A DNA stretch of 63,025 bases, counting the filler, from Octopus bimaculoides (taxonomy: Eukaryota), in the NCBI RefSeq assembly GCF_001194135.2. It is 6 parts of 5 records of this genome, joined end to end, with 100 filler letters (N's around TTAATTAATTAA, not from the genome) between each part and the next. Parts side by side here need not be neighbours in the genome. Positions count along the whole stretch, not along the records: positions 1 to 20,017 come from NC_068988.1; 5 more parts are not named here. One strand, given 5' to 3'. A model generated the notes under the pieces. It had not been told where the DNA came from. It was given only the letters and a program-made list of their open reading frames with translations, and searched no databases. Position numbers and translations under genes: made by a program. How positions within the stretch are numbered: the first letter of the stretch is position 1; every line of letters starts with the position of its first letter. Below, piece by piece: positions 2,523 through 20,017 of the stretch.

Positions 2523-2990
2523 TTGATAAGCAGCAAAATGCTTAAAACAAGGGAGTTGAGTGAGTGTGATCGAGGTAAACTCGTAGCTCATCATAAAGGT
2601 GGAACGTCACACAGGCAATCTGCGCAGATGAAATGTACTCGATGTGCGGCGCAAACCACTCTCAAGCGCATCAGAGAGGCAAAAGATGTGAAGACAATAC
2701 AAAGAACAGGTATAAAAAAGGCTACATCACCTCGTGATGACAGATCCATAAACTGCCAGTCGCTCAGAATCAGGACAAAAGTATTGTCGGCGCTTTGTGC
2801 GAATTTCAACGAGGCAAGTACTTCACAAATATCAACCAGAACTTTTGACTACGGTGTCAAAGGCTTTAAAGCCATTGGTTTCTGAAGCGAATGTGGAAAA
2901 ACGCCTTCAGTGGGCCAAAAACCACTCTAATTGGACCAGTGACAATGGTCGAAAGTCATATGGGCTGATGAAAGTATCTATGAGGTAAGA
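2523..2990 (+). pseudogene. Tc1-family transposase relic (HTH region to first catalytic D), frameshifted and truncated
   Basis: RELSECDRGKLVAHHKGG..RTGIKKATSPRDDR; KPLVSEANVEKRLQWAKNHSNW; and in a shifted frame WSKVIWADES (2946-2975), typical of Tc1 transposases. No TIR pair identified. Confidence 0.85.
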
Positions 2991-4319
2991 TACTAAATGA
3001 ATTCAATCAACATATAAACTTATTGTAACAGGCTTGATGCCCAAATTATATTTTGAAAAAGAGTAGCCAACATAAAGCTAATATTATTTTTCATGTTTTT
3101 ACTCGAGTTTCGGTACATCTGGTGCAACTTTCGTGCACTCTCACATCATCTTGAAATAGAAGACCAGTCGAAAAACCACCGAAGCATGACAGATTAGCCC
3201 AGAAACAAAAAAGGCCTTTTGATTTCACAAACTATTCGAAATCGGATCATGTGGATGCTCCCTGCCAACCAACCGCCCACACTATTTCTAAAAATAGCAA
3301 CCATCCTTGCAAAGCACACATACAAGAATGGATATGAAGAAAAAATTTTGGTTATTCCCCTCAATTTTTTATTAAAAATTATGATTTCTGATGAACTTTT
3401 GACAAAGCAATACACGGTCTCTCTTGTTAAATACTATCTAGACATTCTTTCGGAATATATGCTTATAAAAAATAATATCTGATGAACCTATAAACAATTA
3501 TGAACTTATTTTACTTGCCTGTTTTGAACACTTTTATGTAAACTGTTTAAACACAAAATTTCTGTTAACTTCTTTTATCAGTGTCAAAGATTTTATCACT
3601 GTATTTTAATACATCTATATTAACTAATTTTTATCACCACAAAATCCGCACAAAGCCTCAGCCTTTACTTTAAAATTTTCTTTTCAAACCGGTCTAGTCA
3701 ATAAACATTTTTAAAAGACCTCTGCATTTGCAAACCCTCTTTCCTATATGTTCTCACTCGTGCGTTACCTTCCAATATAGCATAATGTTGTTGTTTTTTT
3801 TAATCGGGTGTTATTTCTTTTGTTTCCCTTAGCGTTTTGAAATCTCTTTTTCTTTTCTTACATTTTATCTCGTCATCTTTTAGTGAAGGAGGATAAACTT
3901 TCTCGACTAGTATGAAGTTAAGTTCATTAAGACGTAGTCTCTAAGTAATCCCATCAGACAATATTGTACATATACTTTTCTCTAAATTCAGTAAGGTAAT
4001 TATTTTAATGAGTTTCGGGTGGCTTGAGTTAAATAGTATGTATTGCTTCGAATATGTAGTTTTATAAGAGAAGTCGGTTTCAGTTTGATTACTAGCTATT
4101 TATTGTTTTTATTTTATTAAAATAACAAGAAACGGAAGTTTCTCTTTGTTCTTTACAATTGTAAATGGAATGTTAGCATTTATGCAATTGGGCAGTGTTT
4201 TACATTCGAATTGTTTACGAGTATCCAAAAGGATAAACTAGTCATTCAGATATCTGTTTCGGTTCTCTCTTATATACTGATAAAATGAGTATCTCTATTT
4301 TTGTTATGATACATGATAC

Positions 4320-4870
4320 GTAGTCAATTCCAATCACCCCATTACTAGATGTCCAAGAATTAAACCTGCTTTGGATCCCATCACAATTCTACATCTGACC
4401 GGTAGTAATCGGTATCAAACAATAAGTAAATTGTTCTGGAGGATAAATCTTCGTGCTTTAATTACAAATTCTTTGTTAATGCCCTCTGATAGTTCTTTTG
4501 GATGGTTTTCCAGCCTGAAATTCCTTCTATTGCATACATCGTAGTATCGTACACACTTACAATAAAAGATTGATATTGAAATATGTTTACTTCACCGAAT
4601 TCATACGAAGATAGACACATTCAGTTTACTTCCCATAAGCATGATCTCAGTGTTATGATTCCTATGAATGACACGAATAATCGATGTATCAAAGATTTAT
4701 AATATCGACACTCAGCGTTATCTATCCTATGAGTAATATGGAATCGGGTGAATTAACTTCAATGACTAGCAATCAATTATCTTATCAAATCCTGAAATGA
4801 AAATTTTGATATAACCTAGAACATATGGAGGTGAAATAAAATACCAGAATTCTTCGCATTATAAAAGCCA
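4320..4870 (-). pseudogene. Penelope-like element RT relic (degenerate)
   Basis: Minus-strand translation LENHPKELSEGINKEFVIKARRFILQNN..(shift)LFDTDYYR..IVMGSKAGLILGHLVMG resembles PLE RT 'NNYF.F...YY.Q..GTAMG...AP.YANL.MG'. The 4520-4870 extension is weaker. Confidence 0.6.
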
Positions 4871-5200
4871 ATCTAGACGATCGTGCTAATGAATATAACA
4901 CAATATAAGTGCTGCCGATGGCATTCATTCGAGACGTTGGTTAATATGAAACTTAGTTTTTGATCTAGACATGAGAGATGTTTTGCTGCTAGTATAAATG
5001 CATATGATACCCAGTTTCATTATTAAATAACTGTCTAATAGTACTTCTCAACTGGTATTTTAATGGTGACAACTGTGGTAAAAAAGCACAAGCTACACTC
5101 TCAAAGAAGTACCAATAACGAACCACAAAGAGATCGGGAAAAATAATTTACTTACATTATTTACATTTGACGGATATTTGTCCTCATCTTGTTTGTTGTT

Positions 5201-5247
5201 AACACAACTTTTCGACTGATATACCCTCTAGCCTTCATCAAGTGTCT
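5201..5247 (-). ncRNA. Degenerate hammerhead ribozyme motif (family D)
   Basis: AGACAC UUGAUGA A GGCUA..CAGUC GAAAA GUU GUGUU; core substitutions. Confidence 0.6.
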
Positions 5248-5304
5248 TTGGAAAATTTCGAACCTGGGTTCTCATTCCTAAGGTACTTTTCGATGTTGTT
5301 GTTG

Positions 5305-5346
<42 letters not shown>

Positions 5347-5395
5347 ACATCGAAAAATACCTTAGAAACGAGAACCCAGGTTAGAAATTTCCCCA

Positions 5396-5442
5396 ATACA
5401 CCTGATGAAGGCTGGACGGTATATCGGCCGAAACCCTGTGTT
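5396..5442 (+). ncRNA. Hammerhead ribozyme motif (family D), cleavage triplet mutated
   Basis: AUACAC CUGAUGA A GGCUG gacgguauau CGGCC GAAAC CCU GUGUU. Confidence 0.7.
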
Positions 5443-7506
5443 AACAACAAACAAGATGAGGACTAATATCCGTCAAATGTAAATAATGTAAATAATGTAC
5501 ATAATTCATCATCTCTTAAATATAGACCAGTAGTTTACTTGTAGAAACTTCACATATTGGTTAAATATTGCTCGAAGTCGTTTGACTAATGTTCCTTCAA
5601 CAGAGCATCTAGAACAGGATCTACGTTTTATTACCAACACGATCGTCCCTGGTTATAGTGCAAAATTCATGATAAAGTTAACGCTTTACTGATTATTACG
5701 TATTTAGAAATTTGCTCTGAGTTGTTTATCGAGTACTTCTGCACAAAGACGCAATCTGTTATCTTAGATTTAAATTCCGACTGATATTTATTTCGAAAAT
5801 AGAATTATGTATTTCTAAAATGTATTTTCCCTCTGCATATTGAAGAAATATATTTATCATTATAAACAATGTTTCTTTTACGATGGATTTTGCTAAAGTT
5901 TGAGTGACAATACTTTAGCCTTCATATCACTAATAACCACTCTTTTTTGGACACATGGGTAAAATTTATATCTGTGAAAAAAAAAAATCTCTAGTAATTT
6001 TATATTCATTTCTCTACTTAAAAGAGTATGCATTTATTAATCCTGTAAAACTGTGGCCATTAAATGCTAATATGGTATTTGCATTTACCAAAATCTAAAC
6101 ACCATATAACGTTAAGAATATGAAATATCCTCATGCCTAATTTATTTCCTGACAATTACCGGTGTTCAGAAGAATTTTCCTAAACAGTTTCCGTAAAACC
6201 AAATGAATTGCACCACTTAGAATCATAGTAACGCATCTGGTGTAACGCAAGTGATATATAAATATAACAGGCATTTTATTAAACCTTATCGAGGCTGAGA
6301 ATCAATCATGTCATTTCATTGCATTTGATCTTATGGGTTTGAATATTAATGTCTATGTATATAAGGCACTTACAATGAAACCTACAAAATACTGATGTAT
6401 GTTAAACTCCTTTTGGAACAAAACACAAGAATTTCTACCAAATTGAAATGGTATAATACTTTATCCGAATAACATGTCACGTTCGACAACAAAAAAAAAA
6501 AACTTCGTGATCTATCGCTTTAATCTAGTTTAGCTAGGTAAAGATTCTTATATTGAATTTTTTCTACCTTGTGTAAAAGTAGTCCATATAATAAATATTA
6601 AAGCTTTGATGACAACGTAGGTTTTGGAATAATTAAGTATTTAGTGTCATATATAAAGAGGTTAGTGCCAATTCAAAAAAAAATTATGTTACATTTAACA
6701 GCTTGAAATTTAATATTTTAGCAATTTTATGATAGTTGATTATAATGAGATACTGACAGAATTGCAATACACTAAATCTTACAATCTATATGATTATAAC
6801 ATAGTGAACTCAATATAATATAAATTATCTGGAGAATTCCACAAAAATCTATCGTATATTTTTGGTTGCAAACACAAATAATAATACGTACATCAAATAC
6901 GCGTAACTTGTTCAAAGTTTAATAGAAAAAGAATATCGATAACCGAAAATAAATGAGGACGGGAAATGGGTGTAGTCATTTTGAAAATACCTGAAAGAAT
7001 TATGTTTATCTTATCACTCTAGAGGTAAGAATATATTTGACAGCTAGATACAAACAGCTGCAAAACTATACTTCAATGCACTAAGTTCTTTTTTATTTGT
7101 CATTTGAAGAAATTTTATGATGTGAAAGAAATCTATATTGAAATATATTACAGAGATGTGAATGTAGTTTCCTATCTTCTGGCAAAGTTCCTATTTTATA
7201 TGCATTCAAACATCCGGTGCAGATAATTCTAATGCTGCAGTAATCCATACAAGTTGGATGAATAGAATATGTCACACTTATGCTATACAAAAAAATTATA
7301 CCGACGGCAGATATATGATATATGGCAAATTTTCTATGATGTACGCATTCATGCATCCGGTTGAGATAAGCAAAACGTTGGAAGAGTACATAGTTTTATT
7401 AATCGATTATGTCACCCCCGTTGGCTATAAAGCAATAAGAAAACGATGAAAAATTATATATGATATATACGTGTGCGCCTGAATGATAGCATATACAAGT
7501 GTAGAG

Positions 7507-8685: not shown

Positions 8686-8890
8686 TTTTCTACTCTAGGC
8701 ATAAGGCCCGAAATTTTGCGGGAGGGAGCTAGTCGATTAGATTAACCCTAGTACGCAACTGGTACTTAATTTATCGACCCCGAAAGGATGAAAAGCAAAT
8801 TCGACCTCGGCGGAATTTGAACTCAGAACGTTAAGACAAACGAAATACCGCTAAGCATTTCGCCCTACAGTTTCTGCCTGCTCTCCGCCT
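8686..8890 (-). mobile_element. SINE family B full-length copy with 17-bp TSD
   Basis: tRNA-like head with B-box (GAGTTCAAATTCC), core CATCCTTTCGGGGTCGATAAATTAAGTACCAG; TGCACCTTAAACTATTA at 8668-8684 and 8891-8907. Confidence 0.92.
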
Positions 8891-11436: not shown

Positions 11437-11510
<74 letters not shown>

Positions 11511-11835: not shown

Positions 11836-12030
11836 CCTTCTACGGTAGGCACAAGGCCTGTAATTTGTGGAAGGGGACTAGTCGATTACACTACCCCAGT
11901 GTTTCACTGGTACTTAATTTATCGACCCCGAAACGATGAAAGGTGAAGTCAACCTCGGCAGAATTTGAACTGATAACATAGCAACGAGCGAAATACCGCT
12001 AATTATTTCGTTCAGCGTGTTATTGATTCT
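11836..12030 (-). mobile_element. SINE family B copy
   Basis: Matches 8686-8890. Confidence 0.85.
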
Positions 12031-12240
12031 TTTCTACTCTAGGCACAAGGCCCGAAATTTTGGAGGAAGGTGCCACTCTATTAGATCGACTCCAGTAAAC
12101 AACTGGCACTTAATTAATCGACCCCGAAAGAGTGAAAGGCAGAGACGACCACGGCAGAATTTGAACTCAAAACGTAGCGAAGGGTGAAATACTGCTCAGT
12201 ATTTCGTCCGGCGTGCTATCGATTCTGCCATATCGCTGCG
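12031..12240 (-). mobile_element. SINE family B copy, adjacent to previous copy
   Basis: TTTCTACTCTAGGCACAAGGCCCGAAATTT..CCGGCGTGCT. Confidence 0.88.
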
Positions 12241-12242
12241 TT

Positions 12243-12243
12243 C

Positions 12244-12280
<37 letters not shown>

Positions 12281-12345
12281 TAATAATGATAATGATGATG
12301 ATGATGATGATGACGATGATGATGATGATGATGATAATAATAATA
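12243..12345. repeat. (AAT)n/(GAT)n microsatellite
   Basis: Direct repeats. Confidence 0.95.
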
Positions 12346-12901
12346 CGAGTAGTAGCAACATGCGTAATAATAAGGAAGAAAATTATTAACGCTAACAGCG
12401 ACTGTACTATCAAAAATGTTAAAAGACATAATTTCAGAAATAGATATACCTACGTACTTCACTCATTCTTTTTACACTCTAGAAAGATTTCCGGATTTTT
12501 GTTTGATTATTTCGTTGTGGATCATGCTTCATTTTTGACCTCTTAATCCCTATTCTCAATTCGGTGCATATTTACGAAAAGGCTATGATGTTCATTCAAA
12601 ATCAGCATTGACAGATGTTGATGTTGTTTGCAAATAGACGCAGCGAAAGAGAAAAATAAATAAGTGAGATATAAAAAGACAAAAACAAAAACGCTACGCC
12701 GGGAAATACTTCTAGATAACATAACACGCGCGGGCACACATACATACGCACACGCAGACGTACATATACACACGCACATATCTTCACACGTATATATGTC
12801 TATTAGAATCGAATGTAACACATGTCTTCTGTAGTATCCTCTACTATCAATTTTGCTCAGATGATTTCCTTAGACCATTTATGCGTAACATGGGAAAATT
12901 A

Positions 12902-13067
12902 TACAGTTCTATATTTAAGAGATGAAGAATTATGTACACTATTTACATTATTTACATTTGACGGATATTTGTCCTCATCTTGTTTGTTGTTAACACGTTT
13001 CGGCTGATATACCCTCCAGCCTCCATAAGGTGTCTTCGGGGAAATTTCGAACATGGATTCTCATTCC
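12902..13067 (-). mobile_element. Family D inverted tail arm
   Basis: Reverse complement of 13245-13372 plus further 3' sequence; degenerate hammerhead at 12992-13035. Confidence 0.9.
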
Positions 13068-13161
13068 AGTCATATGGCGTAGTGGTTAAGAGCGCGGGCT
13101 ACTAACCCCAAGATTCCGAGTTCGATTCCAGGCAGTGACCGGAATAATAATAATAATAATA

Positions 13162-13200
<39 letters not shown>

Positions 13201-13202
13201 AG

Positions 13203-13235
<33 letters not shown>

Positions 13236-13372
13236 TCGAAATATAGGAATGAGAACCCATGTTCGAAATTTCCCCAAGACACATGATGAAGGCTGGAGAG
13301 TATATCAGCCGAAACATTGTGTTAACCACAAACAAGATGAGGACAAATATCCGTCAAATGTAAATAATGTAA
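13068..13372 (+). mobile_element. Family D element: tRNA-derived head + (AAT)n + hammerhead-bearing tail
   Basis: A-box TGGCGTAGTGG (13075-13085), B-box GAGTTCGATTCC (13118-13129), AAT/ATT linker, hammerhead fold 13277-13323. Confidence 0.88.
13277..13323 (+). ncRNA. Hammerhead ribozyme motif (family D), C3 and triplet substitutions
   Basis: AGACAC AUGAUGA A GGCUG gagaguauau CAGCC GAAAC AUU GUGUU. Confidence 0.7.
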
Positions 13373-13417
13373 AGAATGGGAGAATGAAATACTAATTATC
13401 ATATGGTGTAGAGTTTT

Positions 13418-13804
13418 ATAGGAGTGGTTTGTGGCACGTAGCTTGCTTACCAACCACATGGTTGCGGGTTCAGTCCCACTGCGTGACACCTTGGCCAAGT
13501 GTCTTCTACTATAGCCTCGGGTCCACCAAAGCCTTGTGAGTGGATTTGGTAGATGAAAGCCGAAACAAGCCCGTCGTATATTTATGTATATAGGTATCTG
13601 TATGTGTGTCTGTGTTCATCCCCCCAACATCGCTTGACAACTGATCTTCGTGTGTTTACGTCCTCGTAACATAGCGGTTCGGCAAAATTGCCTGATAGAA
13701 TAAGTACTAGGCTTACAAAGAATAAGTCCTAGGGTCGATTTGTTCGACTAAAAATACGGTGCTCCGGCATGACCGCAGTCAAATGACTGAAACAAATAAA
13801 AGAA
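13418..13804 (+). mobile_element. SINE family A full-length copy
   Basis: tRNA-like head with GGGTTCAGTCCC B-box, internal TA/TG tract, tail ending TGACTGAAACAAATAAAAGAA. Confidence 0.92.
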
Positions 13805-13810
13805 TGTGTG

Positions 13811-13882
<72 letters not shown>

Positions 13883-15244
13883 CGTCATCTTATCTGCAAA
13901 AGAGATTTTTCAGGAATATACCCCATTCTTTCTCACTGCTACATATGATAGCTCTTTACACATTAATTCTTTCATTATGTTTCTGTTCTTATTTAATATA
14001 ATTCTTATATCTAGAAATTATCTGCAACTTATTTTGTTCATTCTTATATTTTATTTCAGTTTATGTACAGTTAAAAACTTATCTATTAAAATATTGTTTC
14101 AAAAATTGATTTTTGACTAAATTAGTATTAAATATGGAATCTAAAATAGAAAATAGAAATATTGACTTCAATATGTTGTATTTCTGTCTTGGATCTTATT
14201 TTATAAATTACTCCAAAACAGAAATATACTAAATATACAACTGTCAATACTTAGCTTGTTACCGCCCCTGTATGTGTCACTATTTCTGTGTAAGTATATA
14301 TATATATATATATATATATAAATATATATATNNNNNNNNNNNNNNNNNNNNNNNNNNNNNNNNNNNNNNNNNNNNNNNNNNNNNNNNNNNNNNNNNNNNN
14401 NNNNNNNNNNNNNNNNNNNNNNNNNNNNNNNNNNNNNNNNNNNNNNNNNNNNNNNNNNNNNNNNNNNNNNNNNNNNNNNNNNNNNNNNNNNNNNNNNNNN
14501 NNNNNNNNNNNNNNNNNNNNNNNNNNNNNNNNNNNNNNNNNNNNNNNNNNNNNNNNNNNNNNNNNNNNNNNNNNNNNNNNNNNNNNNNNNNNNNNNNNNN
14601 NNNNNNNNNNNNNNNNNNNNNNNNNNNNNNNNNNNNNNNNNNNNNNNNNNNNNNNNNNNNNNNNNNNNNNNNNNNNNNNNNNNNNNNNNNNNNNNNNNNN
14701 NNNNNNNNNNNNNNNNNNNNNNNNNNNNNNNNNNNNNNNNNNNNNNNNNNNNNNNNNNNNNNNNNNNNNNNNNNNNNNNNNNNNNNNNNNNNNNNNNNNN
14801 NNNNNNNNNNNNNNNNNNNNNNNNNNNNNNNNNNNNNNNNNNNNNNNNNNNNNNNNNNNNNNNNNNNNNNNNNNNNNNNNNNNNNNNNNNNNNNNNNNNN
14901 NNNNNNNNNNNNNNNNNNNNNNNNNNNNNNNNNNNNNNNNNNNNNNNNNNNNNNNNNNNNNNNNNNNNNNNNNNNNNNNNNNNNNNNNNNNNNNNNNNNN
15001 NNNNNNNNNNNNNNNNNNNNNNNNNNNNNNNNNNNNNNNNNNNNNNNNNNNNNNNNNNNNNNNNNNNNNNNNNNNNNNNNNNNNNNNNNNNNNNNNNNNN
15101 NNNNNNNNNNNNNNNNNNNNNNNNNNNNNNNNNNNNNNNNNNNNNNNNNNNNNNNNNNNNNATATATATATATATATATATATACGTATGCATGTATGTA
15201 TGCATGGTTTATGTATGCATGCGCACACGTGTATTTGTAGGTCT

Positions 15245-16161: not shown

Positions 16162-17155
16162 TTGCAAAGATTCAAAGGATGGTTTCCCCTTTTATCTGAT
16201 TTTATACAATTACATCTTTACATATATTTCTCTTTTATCCTATTCCCAGTTCCGGGTCCTCTGATAAGACATATCTTTTCTACCAGATAAACAAACATGC
16301 GAAACTCAGCAGCTCCCTCCCCTCTTCTGCACAACCAAAATATATATTCGGTCTTCGAACATTAGCTTTGAAGGATGTCATACTTGGTGTGATTCACAAG
16401 AGCCAGTTACCGAACTAAGTCCAACCAACGTAAATCTTCTGTTGCTTTGTGTGGGAAGTAGCGCTAAGAAATCGACTGTTGTTACGATAGAAAACATTTC
16501 ACACACTGAGGATTGGAGACTTTGTAACAACATAGAATTGATCACCGTCATGAAAAACAGATACTCATGGATTCTGAGAGAAATAATGAGAGCAAGTGAG
16601 AAAGAGGGAGAGAAAAAAGGTATTGCATTTTGGATTCAAGTAATAAACCATCGCCAGGGCTCCTACTGAAGCATGAAATAGAAGTACTGTCTGAACCGGA
16701 TATCTATTTCGAGTGAAAAACTGGAAATAGATGTCATTATTGCTTAGCAAAAGAAAGACGCTTACACCTACTGGTTAAGAGGTATAGGATTACATTAAAC
16801 AACCTGTTGTTCCTTCTTGAAGTTAGTGTATTGAGATGGGAGATAGATTTCTTCTGTTTCAGTCATTGAGCATTGTATATCTTCAGTTAGAGAAGAGTGA
16901 AATAAGACTAGGAGAACGAATTATACTGATCTCAGAAATTTGATTTGGCCAAGAAGCAGAAAAGCAAAACTCTACGAAAAAGATGCAGCTAACACAATTC
17001 TTATAGGTATCTACGAACAAGGAGGCAGTTTACTAAAATTTGCAGATGCTAAAGAAATAAACTAGAAATCACATGTTCAATTAATATATGCGTATTTTAG
17101 AGTGTGATATATATATCTGTGAGAGAATGTGCGTGTCTGTTCTATATACTTCAAC

Positions 17156-17348
17156 ATTTGGCACAAGGCTATCAAGTTCTGGAAAGACGTTAAGTCGAAT
17201 TCATCGACCCCAAGACTGAGCTGGTACTTATATTATCGACCATGAAAGGATAAAACGCAAAGTCTACCTCGACAGTATTTGAACTAGGAGCGTAAAGACT
17301 TGCGAAAAGTCGCTAAATATTTTGCTCGGAGTGCTAACGATTCTGTCA
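17156..17348 (-). mobile_element. SINE family B, diverged
   Basis: GGCACAAGGC..ATCGACC..GAAAGGAT..GTGCTAACGATTCTG. Confidence 0.8.
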
Positions 17349-17709
17349 TTTATGTATGTGTATAAATGAGTTTATATTTAGGTAATACATGTTTAATGTT
17401 GCAAATGAAAATGGGTTGCCTGGTTTCGTATTTAAGGAGAGACATCTCAATTACTAGAATCACTAGGTTGTTTCAGTGCATATAACAAAATGTTATGTGA
17501 TAATATATGAAGGAAAACAAAAGAAAGTAGTGGGCAGACCTAATATGTTCGTCACCTGTTGTTTAAAGTATAAAGGTGATGAATATAAAAATCACTGACG
17601 CATTCAGTATAGTGACTGCTTTTAATTGCTGAAGTAACAACATACACTGAGATATAAACGTGCTCATGTTATAGATCCTACCATGTCTAATATTCACATG
17701 GCTCTTTTG

Positions 17710-17908
17710 ATAGAATCGTTAGCACGCCAGGCAAAATGTTTAGCGGCATCTCGTCCGTCTTCATGTTCTGAATTCAAATTCATTCTAGGATCATTTTGAC
17801 ATTGATTCTTTCGAACCGATAAAATAAGTTTCCGTTGAACACTGTGAACGATTTAAACAGCTTAGCACGTCCCACAAATCTGGTGGCCATGTGCAAAAAT
17901 TTGAAACC
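17710..17908 (+). mobile_element. SINE family B, diverged, plus strand
   Basis: AGAATCGTTAGCACGCCAGGCAAAATGTTTAGCGG..TTCTGAATTCAAATT. Confidence 0.75.
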
Positions 17909-19255
17909 AATATTCACTTGACCCTGGAATATAATGCAGATAAATCTTGAATATCGTAGTTTGTAGATATTTACACCTTAAGATGTACAGCTTCTAGCTA
18001 TTTGTTTCATGAATATATTTTATGTATTGGTCTAAACATTCTATTTCAATTCTTCTATGTATCACAGTCATGATTTTCTGTTTACATAAGAATCTTAACT
18101 TGTACGTGTTTATTAAATCTGATACGTCTCAGATAACAACATTAATCTAGAATATATACTCGTGGTATCGTTAATGAAGAAGATATTATCTTAAAGAACC
18201 AAATACAAATCTGGTTTAATTTATAAAAAAAAATATATCCGTTTATCTTCATTAGCGTTGGAAAAGGTTATCATAATATTTATAAAACACTGAAATCAAC
18301 ATTGTACGTCTTCCTGTAACCACTCCTTTAGCGAATCTATAGACTGAATGGTGTAGATAGATTTATGAATGGATATTTGTATATATGAGCAAGTAATAAC
18401 ATTAATACATATGTACATCTGTGTACGCCTGTGAGTGTGCAACTACGGAGAGATAAACATACCAGCTACTTGCAGTATGTATGTGCGTGTATGTACGTGT
18501 ATTAAGTTTTATACGGTACACGTCTTCAGTGACATTGAAATTTTGTCTTGCTCGCCTTCATTAAGCTCTGCCAAACTTTGGTTGTTTTGATTTCATAAAA
18601 TCGTTACGAGATTTGCTTTTTGCAGTGTAGGTGTGCCTATATGAATGGCAATTATGGAAAGAGGGGAGGCAGTAATATACGTTTCTCTCTATACGTAAAA
18701 TGTTTTGACTTATTTCATAAAAATGTACGTTATCTTAGTTCATAATTTTACAATCTATCTTGCAATATGATTAGTTTTCGATATGAGCTCTCTCATAATT
18801 AAAAAAAAACCTCTTTAAATGGAAGAATCACAGACATTCGAACAGCTAGTATCAGAAAGCGAAATCAACGGCTAAATACATGCATACATAGATATACACA
18901 TACATATATACACATACATTTACATACACCCGGAACAGAGACAACTCATGAAGGGAAACATTCTTTATGTTGCATGTCTCGTTTCTCTGTTTGCTTTTTT
19001 CGTTGTTCGAAAAAGAGTTTGTTTTCTGTTTTCGTATTTATGTTTTCATTTCTCATTGTGTTTAGCGTTATTTTATTTATTTATTTATTATTATTTTTTT
19101 TTGTGATGTCCTGTACCTTTATGTGCATGTATGTATATATATATATATGTATATATATATATCTGAAGGTATATACATATATGTATAGATACATGCATAT
19201 ATTATTTATATTATTGTATATATATATATATATATATATAAGTATACATATATGT

Positions 19256-20017
19256 ATGGGGACGAGGTTTGCTCCCGTTTATGCGAATTCGGTGATGGGT
19301 TACTTGGAACAAAAACTCTACCAGGAAATAGAGGAGATATATAACACCGAATTTAGGAACTTTATAGAAAAAGCATGGAAGAGATACCTGAACGATTGCT
19401 TCATAATATGGACCAAACCTCAAAGCATTGTGGAAGAATTTAACACCCTACTGAACAACCTACACCCATCCATCCAATTTACAAAGGAGATGAACATTAG
19501 CAAATTACCATTTCTAGGTATAATGGTAATTAAAAAGAACACCGCCATTACCACATATATATATTACAAACACACAGACACACACCAATACTTGAACTTT
19601 AAATCGTGCCATCCACCCCATACAAAACGCAACATACCATACTGCCTAGCCAGGAAAATATGTACTATTGTAGAGGATATAGAGACCAGAAATCAGCGTT
19701 TGATGGAACTGAAAGAATTTCTGCTGAAGCAAAAGTACCCATCACGACTCATAGAAAATGGTATTCAGCGGGCTCCGAATATACCCATACAACAACTGAG
19801 GACACCGCAAAGAAAAGACAAACAGGAAAAGATCATTCCATTTATAGTGACACAAAATCCATGCCACCAGAACATCTTTAATATCGCCAACGCGAATTTA
19901 CCGATCCTTGCACAAAGTAAGGAATTGAGAAATATCATTACAGATCAAAATATAACTCTCAGTAAGAGACAACCTAAAAACTTGAAAAAGCTATTAACAA
20001 AGGCAAGGTTTGACCTC
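19256..20017 (+). pseudogene. Penelope-like element reverse transcriptase C-terminal half and thumb; stop-free frame but catalytic motif YLND
   Basis: MGTRFAPVYANSVMGYLE..WKRYLNDCFIIW..LNNLHPSIQFT..LPFLG..YYKHTDTHQYLNFKSCHPPHTKRNIPYCLARKICTIV..QKYP: hallmark PLE RT motifs; bounded by a TA microsatellite and a gap. Confidence 0.93.

What the first reader, a model, noticed from the sequence alone, without database searches (positions are those of the whole stretch)
5151..5526. All three family D loci are head-to-head inverted pairs
Seen: at 5151-5526 two tails point outward around (ATT)n. At 12902-13372 an inverted tail-only arm abuts the 5' end of a full copy. At 58851-59162 a full minus copy is followed immediately by GTGACCTGAATAATAATAA, the head end plus linker of an opposite-strand copy running into a gap. 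Known: PLE insertions often have an inverted 5'-truncated pLTR next to the 5' end. Three of three loci is unlike ordinary LINE-driven SINE insertion and supports PLE-type integration. Transcripts across these loci would form ~150-bp dsRNA hairpins.
Basis: partly seen in the sequence, partly recalled or inferred. Interest (0 to 1): 0.72.

Follow-up and report, generated by a model that had tools for sequence, protein, structure and literature searches.

The report
Octopus SINE inserted as inverted pairs
A short tRNA-headed mobile element in an octopus genome sits at both of its sites in this window as two copies joined head-to-head, with the sequence marks expected if a Penelope-like retrotransposon enzyme copied RNA into both strands of one DNA break.

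Summary
Confirmed for both loci in the piece. Locus 1 (5154-5530) is two tail modules pointing outward around (TTA)12. Locus 2 (12900-13375) is an inverted, 5'-truncated tail module that abuts, within 1-2 nt, the first base of a full copy (tRNA-like head, (AAT)n linker, tail).

- Each whole composite is bracketed by a 10-bp target-site duplication (9/10 matches; chance about 1.5% per locus). This points to one integration event per pair.
- In each locus only one outer end carries an extra ~37-40 nt, 28/29 identical between loci. This matches the published one-sided PLE "tail".
- The family consensus forms a PLE-type minimal hammerhead ribozyme (0 of 200,000 shuffles).
- Two PLE reverse-transcriptase fragments lie in the same window.

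Eight copies of two other SINE families in the window never form abutting head-to-head pairs. The arms differ by 6-11%, so they are not assembly fold-backs.

Limits: only two loci could be examined, no autonomous partner with a matching 3' end was found, and every hammerhead copy is mutated. This is a new family showing known PLE insertion behaviour. The closest element precedent is schistosome Sm-alpha.

The parts
5144..5153 (.). Locus 1 left target-site duplication, TAATTTACTT
   Evidence: 9/10 match to 5531-5540. A match this good occurs in 1.5% of random window pairs.
5154..5297 (-). Locus 1 left arm: tail module in minus orientation with the short 3' end (...CCGTCAAATGTAAATAATGT) at 5154. 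Holds a mutated hammerhead remnant at about 5201-5247.
   Evidence: (nhmmer E 2.7e-55).
5298..5345 (-). Locus 1 spacer: GTTGTTGTTGTTTGTT plus (TTA)12. This is the (AAT)n linker of the minus-strand copy read on the plus strand.
   Evidence: TRF 5309-5345, 100% matches; alignment A1.
5346..5530 (+). Locus 1 right arm: 5'-truncated tail module starting at the linker/tail boundary, with the long 3' end. The extension is at about 5494-5530. Hammerhead motif at 5397-5442; this is the only copy with an intact CUGAUGA / helix II / GAAA, and it has U16.1 changed to C.
   Evidence: (E 3.3e-55).
5531..5540 (.). Locus 1 right target-site duplication, TAGTTTACTT
12890..12899 (.). Locus 2 left target-site duplication, ATGGGAAAAT
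   Evidence: 9/10 match to 13376-13385.
12900..13067 (-). Locus 2 inverted arm: tail module 5'-truncated at GGAATGAG, with the long 3' end (extension 12900-12936). Hammerhead remnant at about 12991-13036.
   Evidence: (E 1.1e-48).
13069..13140 (+). tRNA-like head of the full copy. By eye, A box TGGCGTAGTGG and B box GAGTTCGATTCC. It starts 1-2 nt after the inverted arm.
   Evidence: Rfam tRNA model positions 1-71, 12.3 bits, below the gathering score. ARAGORN finds no tRNA. The same head-linker-tail order is seen in P0091.
13143..13233 (+). Linker microsatellite (AAT)6 (ATT)18 AAGAT (AAT)9. The internal ATT block is unexplained.
   Evidence: The canonical linker is a plain (AAT)~9 in P0091.
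13234..13375 (+). Locus 2 sense tail module of the full copy, with the short 3' end (...GTAAATAATGTAAAGA). Hammerhead remnant at 13278-13323, with core CAUGAUGA.
   Evidence: (E 2.5e-48).
13376..13385 (.). Locus 2 right target-site duplication, ATGGGAGAAT
19253..20017 (+). Context: Penelope-like element ORF fragment (RT C-terminal half), open for 254 codons. It is 5'-truncated next to a (TA)n run and cut by the piece edge before the GIY-YIG domain. It shows that a possible source of the enzyme is present in this genome. It is not shown to be the partner.
   Evidence: 87 homologues carrying RVT_1 / HTH_animal / GIY-YIG; best hit O. sinensis, 83% identity; tblastn.
3749..4558 (-). Context: old, stop-riddled PLE RT fragment about 600 nt from locus 1. 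The locus 1 duplication separates it from the composite, so it is not part of the same insertion.
   Evidence: tblastn E 1e-19 to 1e-25 with in-frame stops. No PLE homology in 4560-5130.

Best explanation
Family D is a non-autonomous retroelement of octopuses. It has a tRNA-derived head (presumed Pol III promoter), an (AAT)n linker, and a ~150-190-nt tail module derived from the hammerhead-bearing terminal region (pLTR) of a Penelope-like element (PLE).

Proposed mechanism. It is copied into the genome by a PLE reverse transcriptase / GIY-YIG endonuclease acting in trans. The enzyme cuts both strands of an AT-rich target about 10 bp apart. Each exposed 3'-OH primes reverse transcription on an element RNA, starting at one of two internal sites about 40 nt apart (short end or long 'tail' end). 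The two cDNAs grow towards each other and are joined. One is full-length or reaches the linker; the other is 5'-truncated. The result is a head-to-head palindrome with tails outward, flanked by one target-site duplication.

Shown by sequence: the architecture, the duplications that bracket the composites, the one-sided extension, the consensus hammerhead, the equal age of the arms within a locus, and the recurrence of the head-linker-tail unit.

Inferred: Pol III transcription, the identity of the enzyme, dual-strand priming in vivo, and how the cDNAs are joined.

A transcript crossing either locus would fold into a 125-150-bp duplex.
For: Pairing and polarity.

Exactly four arms in two pairs, with no solitary copy in the window.

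Target-site duplications of 10 bp (9/10) flank the whole composite at both loci. The null is 1.5% per locus, so about 2e-4 jointly. There is no second duplication at the inner junction; in locus 2 the inverted arm meets base 1 of the head with 0-1 nt of filler.

The one-sided extension GTACATAATTCWTCATCTCTTAAATATAGA... is 28/29 identical between L1-right and L2-left. It is also present in P0088 of O. bimaculoides. It is absent beyond both short ends (shuffle tests give 0.04-0.64 across the four comparisons; only one falls below 0.05, which I do not count as a match after four tests).

[quoted passage not shown] These are the features listed for PLE min-HHRs in PMC4209133. 0 of 200,000 shuffles match, and there is no other hit in 59 kb of octopus DNA on either strand. 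The fold costs -12.0 kcal/mol against an MFE of -13.0.

Private substitutions are about 6-8 for both L1 arms and about 3-5 for both L2 arms.

P0091 encodes antisense tail, I9, then antisense head, so the composite unit recurs at an independent locus.

PLE RT fragments lie in the window.

Published PLE behaviour: an inverted 5'-truncated copy, a one-sided 30-40-bp tail, a variable duplication length and a microsatellite bias (PMC8557442). Both strands are cleaved and extended, there are two RT start sites, and ATT is preferred (PMC11167929). Dual min-HHRs occur 100-700 bp apart on opposite strands (PMC4209133).

Controls: 0 of 8 copies of two other SINE families are abutting head-to-head.
Against: - Only two loci were examined.
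- No autonomous PLE with a matching 3' end or pLTR was found. The tail profile hits nothing in 37 kb of O. sinensis DNA that includes two PLE copies. A six-frame tail query found no PLE protein with a matching terminus.
- Rfam reports no hammerhead, and every individual copy has at least one core mutation. The ribozyme therefore rests on a four-sequence consensus, and I wrote the descriptor after seeing the motif, although from published features.
- Both duplications are 10 bp, whereas PLE duplications are described as variable. Their boundaries were chosen after the fact within +/-3 nt.
- No partial-tandem (pLTR) arrangement is seen.
- The one external DNA copy (L003) has an unseen 5' side and may be solitary.
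- The aberrant linker of locus 2 is not explained by the model.
Confidence: 0.72

Rival explanations
1. Two independent insertions per locus. A first family D copy landed, and a second was later attracted to it. The attraction could be that the enzyme recognises its own tail sequence or prefers the ATT-rich linker. The pairing would then reflect self-targeting rather than a single dual-primed event.
For: The PLE endonuclease is reported to recognise PLE-derived sequence and to prefer 5'-ATT-3' (PMC11167929). The (AAT)n linker is a run of that motif. The arms of a locus are not closer to each other than to arms of the other locus (88.5-94.3% overall, star-like pattern).
Against: The only duplications found bracket the whole composites. 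No second duplication lies at the inner junctions, and no leftover linker or head lies beyond the right arm of locus 1, as nesting would leave. The arms of each locus carry equal private substitution loads.
Confidence: 0.12
2. A foldback or MITE-like DNA transposon, for example Mutator-like, with ~150-190-bp terminal inverted repeats and a fixed 10-bp target-site duplication. It would move by cut-and-paste. The tRNA-like head in locus 2 would be internal cargo or an insertion.
For: Long inverted arms with an AT-rich centre. The duplication is the same 10-bp length at both loci.
Against: - The two termini are not inverted repeats of each other. One end extends ~40 nt beyond the other, and the sequence past the short ends does not match the extension.
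- The inner ends of the arms differ between loci, as 5' truncation would give.
- The head-linker-tail order recurs at an independent locus as a unit.
- The arms contain a hammerhead and end in variable 9-mer repeats, which is typical of a retroelement 3' end.
- No site supports separate 'long-arm' and 'short-arm' lineages shared across loci.
Confidence: 0.05
3. An ordinary LINE-driven SINE insertion, followed by a local inverted duplication. Hairpin formation or template switching at the self-complementary AAT/ATT microsatellite during DNA replication or repair would cause the duplication.
For: The AAT/ATT runs sit at the centre of both palindromes, and in locus 2 they switch polarity. They pair with each other in the predicted fold.
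Against: A fold-back duplication would copy flanking unique DNA as well. Here the arm homology stops at element 3' ends, and the two ends are of different types (short and long). Direct duplications, not inverted flanks, bracket the composites. There is no poly-A or simple-repeat 3' tail.
Confidence: 0.05
4. Assembly artefact: a short-read assembler folded a repeat back on itself or joined two unrelated copies.
For: The piece comes from a gapped assembly (N run 14332-15161). PLE-type structures are known to trouble short-read assemblies (PMC8557442).
Against: The arms differ at 6-11% of positions with private substitutions and indels, so they are distinct genomic sequences rather than a mirrored read path. 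Matching duplications flank both composites. The same architecture occurs twice, with different inner junctions.
Confidence: 0.03

Closest known systems
Insertions of endonuclease-positive Penelope-like elements (Penelope/Poseidon, Neptune, Naiad), as described by Craig et al. 2021 (PMC8557442) and Frangieh et al. 2024 (PMC11167929)
   Same: An inverted 5'-truncated copy abuts the 5' end of a more complete copy. A 30-40-bp tail extension is present at one end only. There is a hammerhead in the terminal region, an AT-rich or microsatellite context, and a target-site duplication. In vitro, both strands are cleaved and extended.
   Different: Family D has no ORF. It is about 0.3 kb, begins with a tRNA-like head and an (AAT)n linker, and shows no partial-tandem pLTR in these two loci.
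Sm-alpha / Sj-alpha SINE-like elements of Schistosoma (PMC2770079)
   Same: tRNA-derived head plus a hammerhead ribozyme in a short, dispersed, high-copy non-autonomous retroelement.
   Different: Sm-alpha carries a canonical type I hammerhead that Rfam detects. Family D has a minimal PLE-type hammerhead without helix III, an (AAT)n linker, and a different phylum. I found no description of Sm-alpha insertion junctions (inverted pairs, tails) in the papers I read.
Metazoan non-LTR retrozymes (PMC7229834; bioRxiv 10.64898/2026.07.22.740005)
   Same: Short, non-coding, hammerhead-bearing dependants of PLEs, related to pLTRs.
   Different: Retrozymes occur as head-to-tail tandem repeats and are proposed to move through circular RNA. 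Family D is dispersed, has a tRNA-like head, and forms inverted pairs rather than direct ones.
L1 twin priming (Ostertag and Kazazian 2001; from my own knowledge)
   Same: Both strands of the target prime cDNA synthesis in one integration event, giving an inverted segment and a single target-site duplication.
   Different: Twin priming uses one RNA. The inverted and direct segments are therefore different parts of the element and form no palindrome. Here the two arms are the same part of the element.
LINE-dependent tRNA SINEs, for example the two other SINE families in this window
   Same: tRNA-like head, short length, dispersed copies with flanking duplications.
   Different: The control copies in the window are solitary, in direct tandem, or tail-to-tail 359 nt apart, and one family ends in a simple repeat. 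Family D ends in (GTAAATAAT)n with or without a 40-nt extension, and is always paired here.

Membership tests
PLE-type insertion (non-autonomous dependant of a Penelope-like element) | An inverted 5'-truncated copy adjacent to the 5' end of a more complete copy | tested here: met
   Both loci. In locus 2 the inverted arm meets base 1 of the head.
PLE-type insertion (non-autonomous dependant of a Penelope-like element) | A 30-40-bp 'tail' extension present at only one end of the insertion unit | tested here: met
   The ~37-40-nt extension is on L1-right and L2-left only, 28/29 identical between them. No significant match lies beyond the short ends.
PLE-type insertion (non-autonomous dependant of a Penelope-like element) | Hammerhead ribozyme motif in the terminal (pLTR-like) region | tested here: inconclusive
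   The consensus meets the min-HHR features, against 0 of 200,000 shuffles. However, each copy is mutated, Rfam finds nothing, and no cleavage assay was done.
PLE-type insertion (non-autonomous dependant of a Penelope-like element) | Target-site duplication flanking the whole tandem or inverted unit | tested here: met
   10-bp, 9/10 duplications at both loci; null 1.5% per locus.
PLE-type insertion (non-autonomous dependant of a Penelope-like element) | 3' module homologous to the terminus of an autonomous PLE in the same genome | tested here: inconclusive
   No match in the O. sinensis PLE loci L001/L002 or among database proteins. No complete PLE 3' end from this genome was available to compare.
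PLE-type insertion (non-autonomous dependant of a Penelope-like element) | Partial head-to-tail tandems (pseudo-LTRs) | tested here: not met
   No direct tandem of family D in the window. This feature is frequent in PLEs but is not obligatory.
tRNA-derived SINE | Head derived from a tRNA with internal Pol III A and B boxes | tested here: inconclusive
   Full-length but sub-threshold tRNA model match (12.3 bits against a gathering score of 29). ARAGORN is negative. The boxes were recognised by eye only.
tRNA-derived SINE | 3' end shared with a partner LINE and ending in poly-A or a simple repeat | tested here: not met
   The tail ends in (GTAAATAAT)2-3 with or without a unique 40-nt extension, with no A-rich or simple-repeat terminus. 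No LINE partner was searched genome-wide.
MITE / foldback DNA transposon | The two termini are inverted repeats of each other up to the duplication | tested here: not met
   One terminus is ~40 nt longer. The terminal sequences ACATTATTTAC... and ...AGAACTGTATA are unrelated.
MITE / foldback DNA transposon | Target-site duplication of fixed length | tested here: inconclusive
   Both are 10 bp, but n = 2.

The most novel reading that the evidence does not exclude
Family D would be the first tRNA-promoter SINE shown to ride on Penelope-like element machinery. Dual-strand priming would be its normal, near-obligate mode of insertion. Almost every new copy would then create a 125-150-bp perfect hairpin, making this one family a systematic source of long dsRNA (ADAR editing or siRNA substrates) in octopus transcripts. 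It would also give a compact, genome-wide in vivo record of the PLE integration reaction.
Probability: 0.25. Interest if true: 0.75.

Novelty: new member of a known kind. Interest (0 to 1): 0.5.

Why it matters
How PLEs integrate is the least understood of the major retrotransposition mechanisms. Cleavage and extension of both strands, and the two internal start sites, were shown in vitro only in 2024. A 0.3-kb dependant whose complete insertions (both junctions, both end types and the target duplication) fit in 400-500 bp would allow thousands of natural integration events to be read from a genome assembly.

It would also add a PLE partner to the list of SINE drivers in a lineage where SINEs make up a large share of the genome. 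It would identify a repeat family that builds long inverted repeats by its own insertion mechanism, which is relevant to the extensive RNA editing of cephalopods.

Tried and rejected
- **Rfam**, on the whole piece and on one arm alone, gave no hammerhead. The miRNA-like hits at 5256-5387 only reflect the long hairpin.
- **ARAGORN** found no tRNA.
- **Exact-pattern DNA scans** for other copies found nothing: metagenome contigs twice, prokaryotic genome contigs once, viral contigs once. These collections hold no octopus DNA.
- **Protein searches as a stand-in for DNA search** gave four ORFs from other copies (P0088-P0091). Only one had retrievable DNA (L003), and that contig starts inside the linker, so pairing could not be scored.
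- **The 37 kb of O. sinensis DNA** around two PLE copies contains no family D copy and no min-HHR.
- **Coding origin of the tail.** I considered that the open 62-codon sense frame of the tail marks a coding origin. I rejected this because 8% of shuffles do as well.
- **Locus 1 as pLTR of the old PLE fragment.** I considered that locus 1 is the upstream pLTR plus inverted copy of the old PLE fragment at 3749-4558. I rejected this because the duplication at 5144-5153 separates them and there is no PLE homology in 4560-5130.
- **Palindrome as master copy.** I considered that the palindrome itself is a retrotransposing master copy. I rejected this because no site groups the long arms against the short arms across loci, and the inner junctions differ.
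- **Structure of the tail RNA.** The tail RNA as a whole is not unusually structured (z -0.35).
Full report

At locus 1, the repeat finder reports inverted arms 5148-5297 and 5346-5495 (150 nt, 89% complementary, 48 nt apart). They surround a perfect (TTA)12.3 at 5309-5345. At locus 2, an inverted arm (12900-13067) is followed at once by a tRNA-like head, a 91-nt AAT/ATT microsatellite and a sense tail.

Aligning the four arms (A1) defines a shared tail module, AACATCGAAA...CCGTCAAATGTAAATAATGTAA. All four have their 3' ends pointing outward. A profile built from the arms finds exactly these four matches in the window (E 1e-48 to 1e-55) and nothing else even at E<=10.

A self-comparison of the window shows two other SINE families with eight copies. 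They occur as solitary copies, as a direct tandem (11838-12226), or tail-to-tail 359 nt apart, and never as abutting head-to-head pairs. Counted by locus this is 2 of 2 against 0 of about 7, which is roughly p = 0.03. The positional coincidence of two abutting pairs in 20 kb is of the order of 1e-5.

**Host and element.** The window is octopus DNA.
- An open PLE reading frame at 19253-20017 is 83% identical to an Octopus sinensis protein. Its relatives carry RVT_1, HTH_animal and GIY-YIG domains.
- Translations of the tail module hit O. bimaculoides and O. sinensis proteins and one Logan contig.
- P0091, an O. bimaculoides NUP42 gene model, ends in ...PSSGVLGKFRTWVLIPKVFFDA-IIIIIIIII-QVTAWNRTRNLGVSS. 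This is the antisense reading of tail, (AAT)9 and head. The head-linker-tail composite is therefore a recurring unit and not an accident of locus 2.
- The head gives a full-length but sub-threshold tRNA match at 13069-13140 (12.3 bits), and ARAGORN calls nothing. 'tRNA-derived' is therefore likely but not proven.

**New evidence 1: one event per pair.** The sequences just outside each composite are direct repeats. At locus 1 they are TAATTTACTT (5144-5153) and TAGTTTACTT (5531-5540). At locus 2 they are ATGGGAAAAT (12890-12899) and ATGGGAGAAT (13376-13385).

A 10-mer match this good, within 29-nt search windows, occurs in 1.5% of random window pairs from the same piece. For both loci together that is about 2e-4. 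One mismatch in ten fits the 6-11% divergence between arms.

There is no second duplication at the inner junctions. In locus 2 the truncated inverted arm ends at 13067 and the tRNA homology begins at 13069. Private substitutions number about 6-8 in each arm of locus 1 and about 3-5 in each arm of locus 2, as expected if the two arms of a locus are the same age.

**New evidence 2: asymmetric ends.** L1-right and L2-left continue about 37-40 nt past the point where L1-left and L2-right end. The core of this extension (TACATAATTCWTCATCTCTTAAATATAGA) is 28/29 identical between the two loci, and it also appears in P0088. The DNA beyond the two short ends does not resemble it (shuffle tests give 0.04-0.64 across four comparisons; only one falls below 0.05, which I do not count as a match).

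Each composite therefore has one long end and one short end. In both loci the long end belongs to the more 5'-truncated arm. The short ends fall at slightly different points inside a 9-mer repeat, (GTAAATAAT)n.

[quoted passage not shown] Frangieh et al. showed that a purified PLE protein cleaves and extends both strands. They also showed that it prefers 5'-ATT-3' and starts reverse transcription at two internal sites whose spacing corresponds to the tail (PMC11167929).

**New evidence 3: a hammerhead.** The family consensus reads GACAC-CUGAUGA-A-GGCUGG(AGGGUAUA)UCAGCC-GAAA-CA-U-U|GUGUU. It has the following features:
- the catalytic boxes;
- the G10.1-C11.1 pair;
- a 5-6-bp helix II;
- no helix III;
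- a 5-bp helix I.

Cervera and de la Pena list these features as recurring in metazoan PLE 'min-HHRs', which they propose act as dimers (PMC4209133). They also note dual min-HHRs 100-700 bp apart on opposite strands, which is the geometry seen here.

A descriptor built from those features matches the consensus, 0 of 200,000 shuffles, and nothing else in the piece. A relaxed version matches only L1-right in 59 kb of octopus DNA on both strands. The hammerhead fold is within 1 kcal/mol of the MFE of that segment, and helix II appears in the MFE and centroid folds of the whole tail.

There are caveats. Every individual copy has at least one core mutation. Rfam's curated models find nothing. I wrote the descriptor after noticing the motif. 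The predicted cleavage site lies 52-57 nt upstream of the short ends and 93-97 nt upstream of the long ends. This layout is similar to the anole element, where the cut site precedes the reverse-transcription start sites by about 85-92 nt.

**Mechanism.** The best reading is that family D RNA is used in trans by a PLE enzyme. The enzyme opens both strands about 10 bp apart, and each 3'-OH primes cDNA synthesis at the short or the long start site. The two cDNAs meet and are joined, and one of them usually stops early. This accounts for tails pointing outward, variable inner ends, a single duplication, the one-sided extension and the equal age of the arms.

Several points remain inferred: whether one or two RNA molecules are used, how the cDNAs are joined, why the long end goes with the truncated arm (n = 2), and which PLE is the partner. 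Transcription across either locus would give a very stable hairpin: -194.2 kcal/mol with z -25.7, and -248.7 kcal/mol with z -25.9. Whether such transcripts exist was not tested.

**Rivals.**
- *Independent, self-targeted insertions.* These should leave arm-specific duplications or remnants of the interrupted copy; none are seen.
- *A foldback or MITE DNA transposon.* The equal 10-bp duplications fit this. It is contradicted by termini that are not inverted repeats of each other, by variable inner ends, and by the recurring head-linker-tail unit.
- *Fold-back duplication at the AAT/ATT run.* This would copy flanking DNA, whereas homology stops at element ends of two different types.
- *An assembler fold-back.* This would give identical arms, whereas these differ at 6-11% of sites with indels.

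**What is missing.** I could not sample the genome. The public DNA collections available hold no octopus sequence. The only external DNA copy (L003) starts inside its linker. No complete PLE 3' end from an octopus was available, so the partner relationship is untested. The tail profile finds nothing around two O. sinensis PLE copies, and no PLE protein shares the tail's translation.

**Comparison and novelty.** The insertion anatomy is that of canonical endonuclease-positive PLEs. The element type resembles schistosome Sm-alpha/Sj-alpha, which are tRNA-derived, SINE-like and hammerhead-bearing (PMC2770079). More loosely it resembles animal retrozymes, which are now argued to be PLE dependants (bioRxiv 10.64898/2026.07.22.740005).

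Searches of the held literature found no description of a cephalopod SINE with PLE-type insertion, or of a tRNA-headed SINE whose junctions show the PLE tail and inverted copy. I therefore file it as a new member of a known kind: a new family, in a new phylum, showing known PLE behaviour in a compact form.

**Verdict.** Confidence in the PLE-type single-event explanation is 0.72. Interest is 0.5.

Noticed in passing
window 19253-20017 (+): Penelope-like element ORF fragment (RT C-terminal half), open for 254 codons with no stops. It begins directly after a (TA)n run (19130-19257) and is cut by the piece edge before the GIY-YIG domain. Best relative is O. sinensis at 83% identity. The homologue P0002 has a CX4CxxC motif before GIY-YIG, as described for the Neptune and Nematis clades.
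   Followed up: partly
window 3749-4558 (-): Old PLE RT fragment with many in-frame stops, about 30% identical to the same homologues and about 600 nt from locus 1. It seems unrelated to the locus 1 insertion.
   Followed up: partly
window 13143-13233: The linker of the full copy reads (AAT)6 (ATT)18 AAGAT (AAT)9, whereas another full copy (P0091) has a plain (AAT)9. The inverted ATT block is self-complementary with its neighbours. The insertion model does not explain it.
   Followed up: no
P0090 (O. sinensis LOC115224785 isoform X2) and P0091 (O. bimaculoides NUP42 model): Family D copies are built into gene models. The first 36 residues of P0090 are the sense tail, and the splice donor seems to fall in the GTAAAT repeat. 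The last ~60 residues of P0091 are an antisense full copy. These may be exonisation or annotation artefacts.
   Followed up: no
window 2523-2988 (+): Fossil Tc1/mariner-type transposase fragments with weak HTH_SB and HTH_Tnp_Tc3_2 matches below the Pfam cut-offs.
   Followed up: partly
window 11838-12345: Two copies of another SINE family in direct tandem (11838-12010, 12030-12226), followed by an (ATA)n(ATG)n microsatellite. Further copies lie at 8686-8865 and 17148-17360, with an inverted one at 17708-17829.
   Followed up: partly
window 13397-13805 and 1885-2232: A third tRNA-like SINE family starts 12 nt after the right duplication of locus 2. Its 5' end (CATATGGTGTAGAG) resembles the start of the family D head (CATATGGCGTAGTG).
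   Followed up: partly
window 11437-11510: Perfect (TAG)24.7 microsatellite.
   Followed up: no
window 14332-15161: Assembly gap (run of N) flanked on both sides by (TA)n. The top-ranked 'inverted repeats' of the repeat finder there are only the N run.
   Followed up: yes
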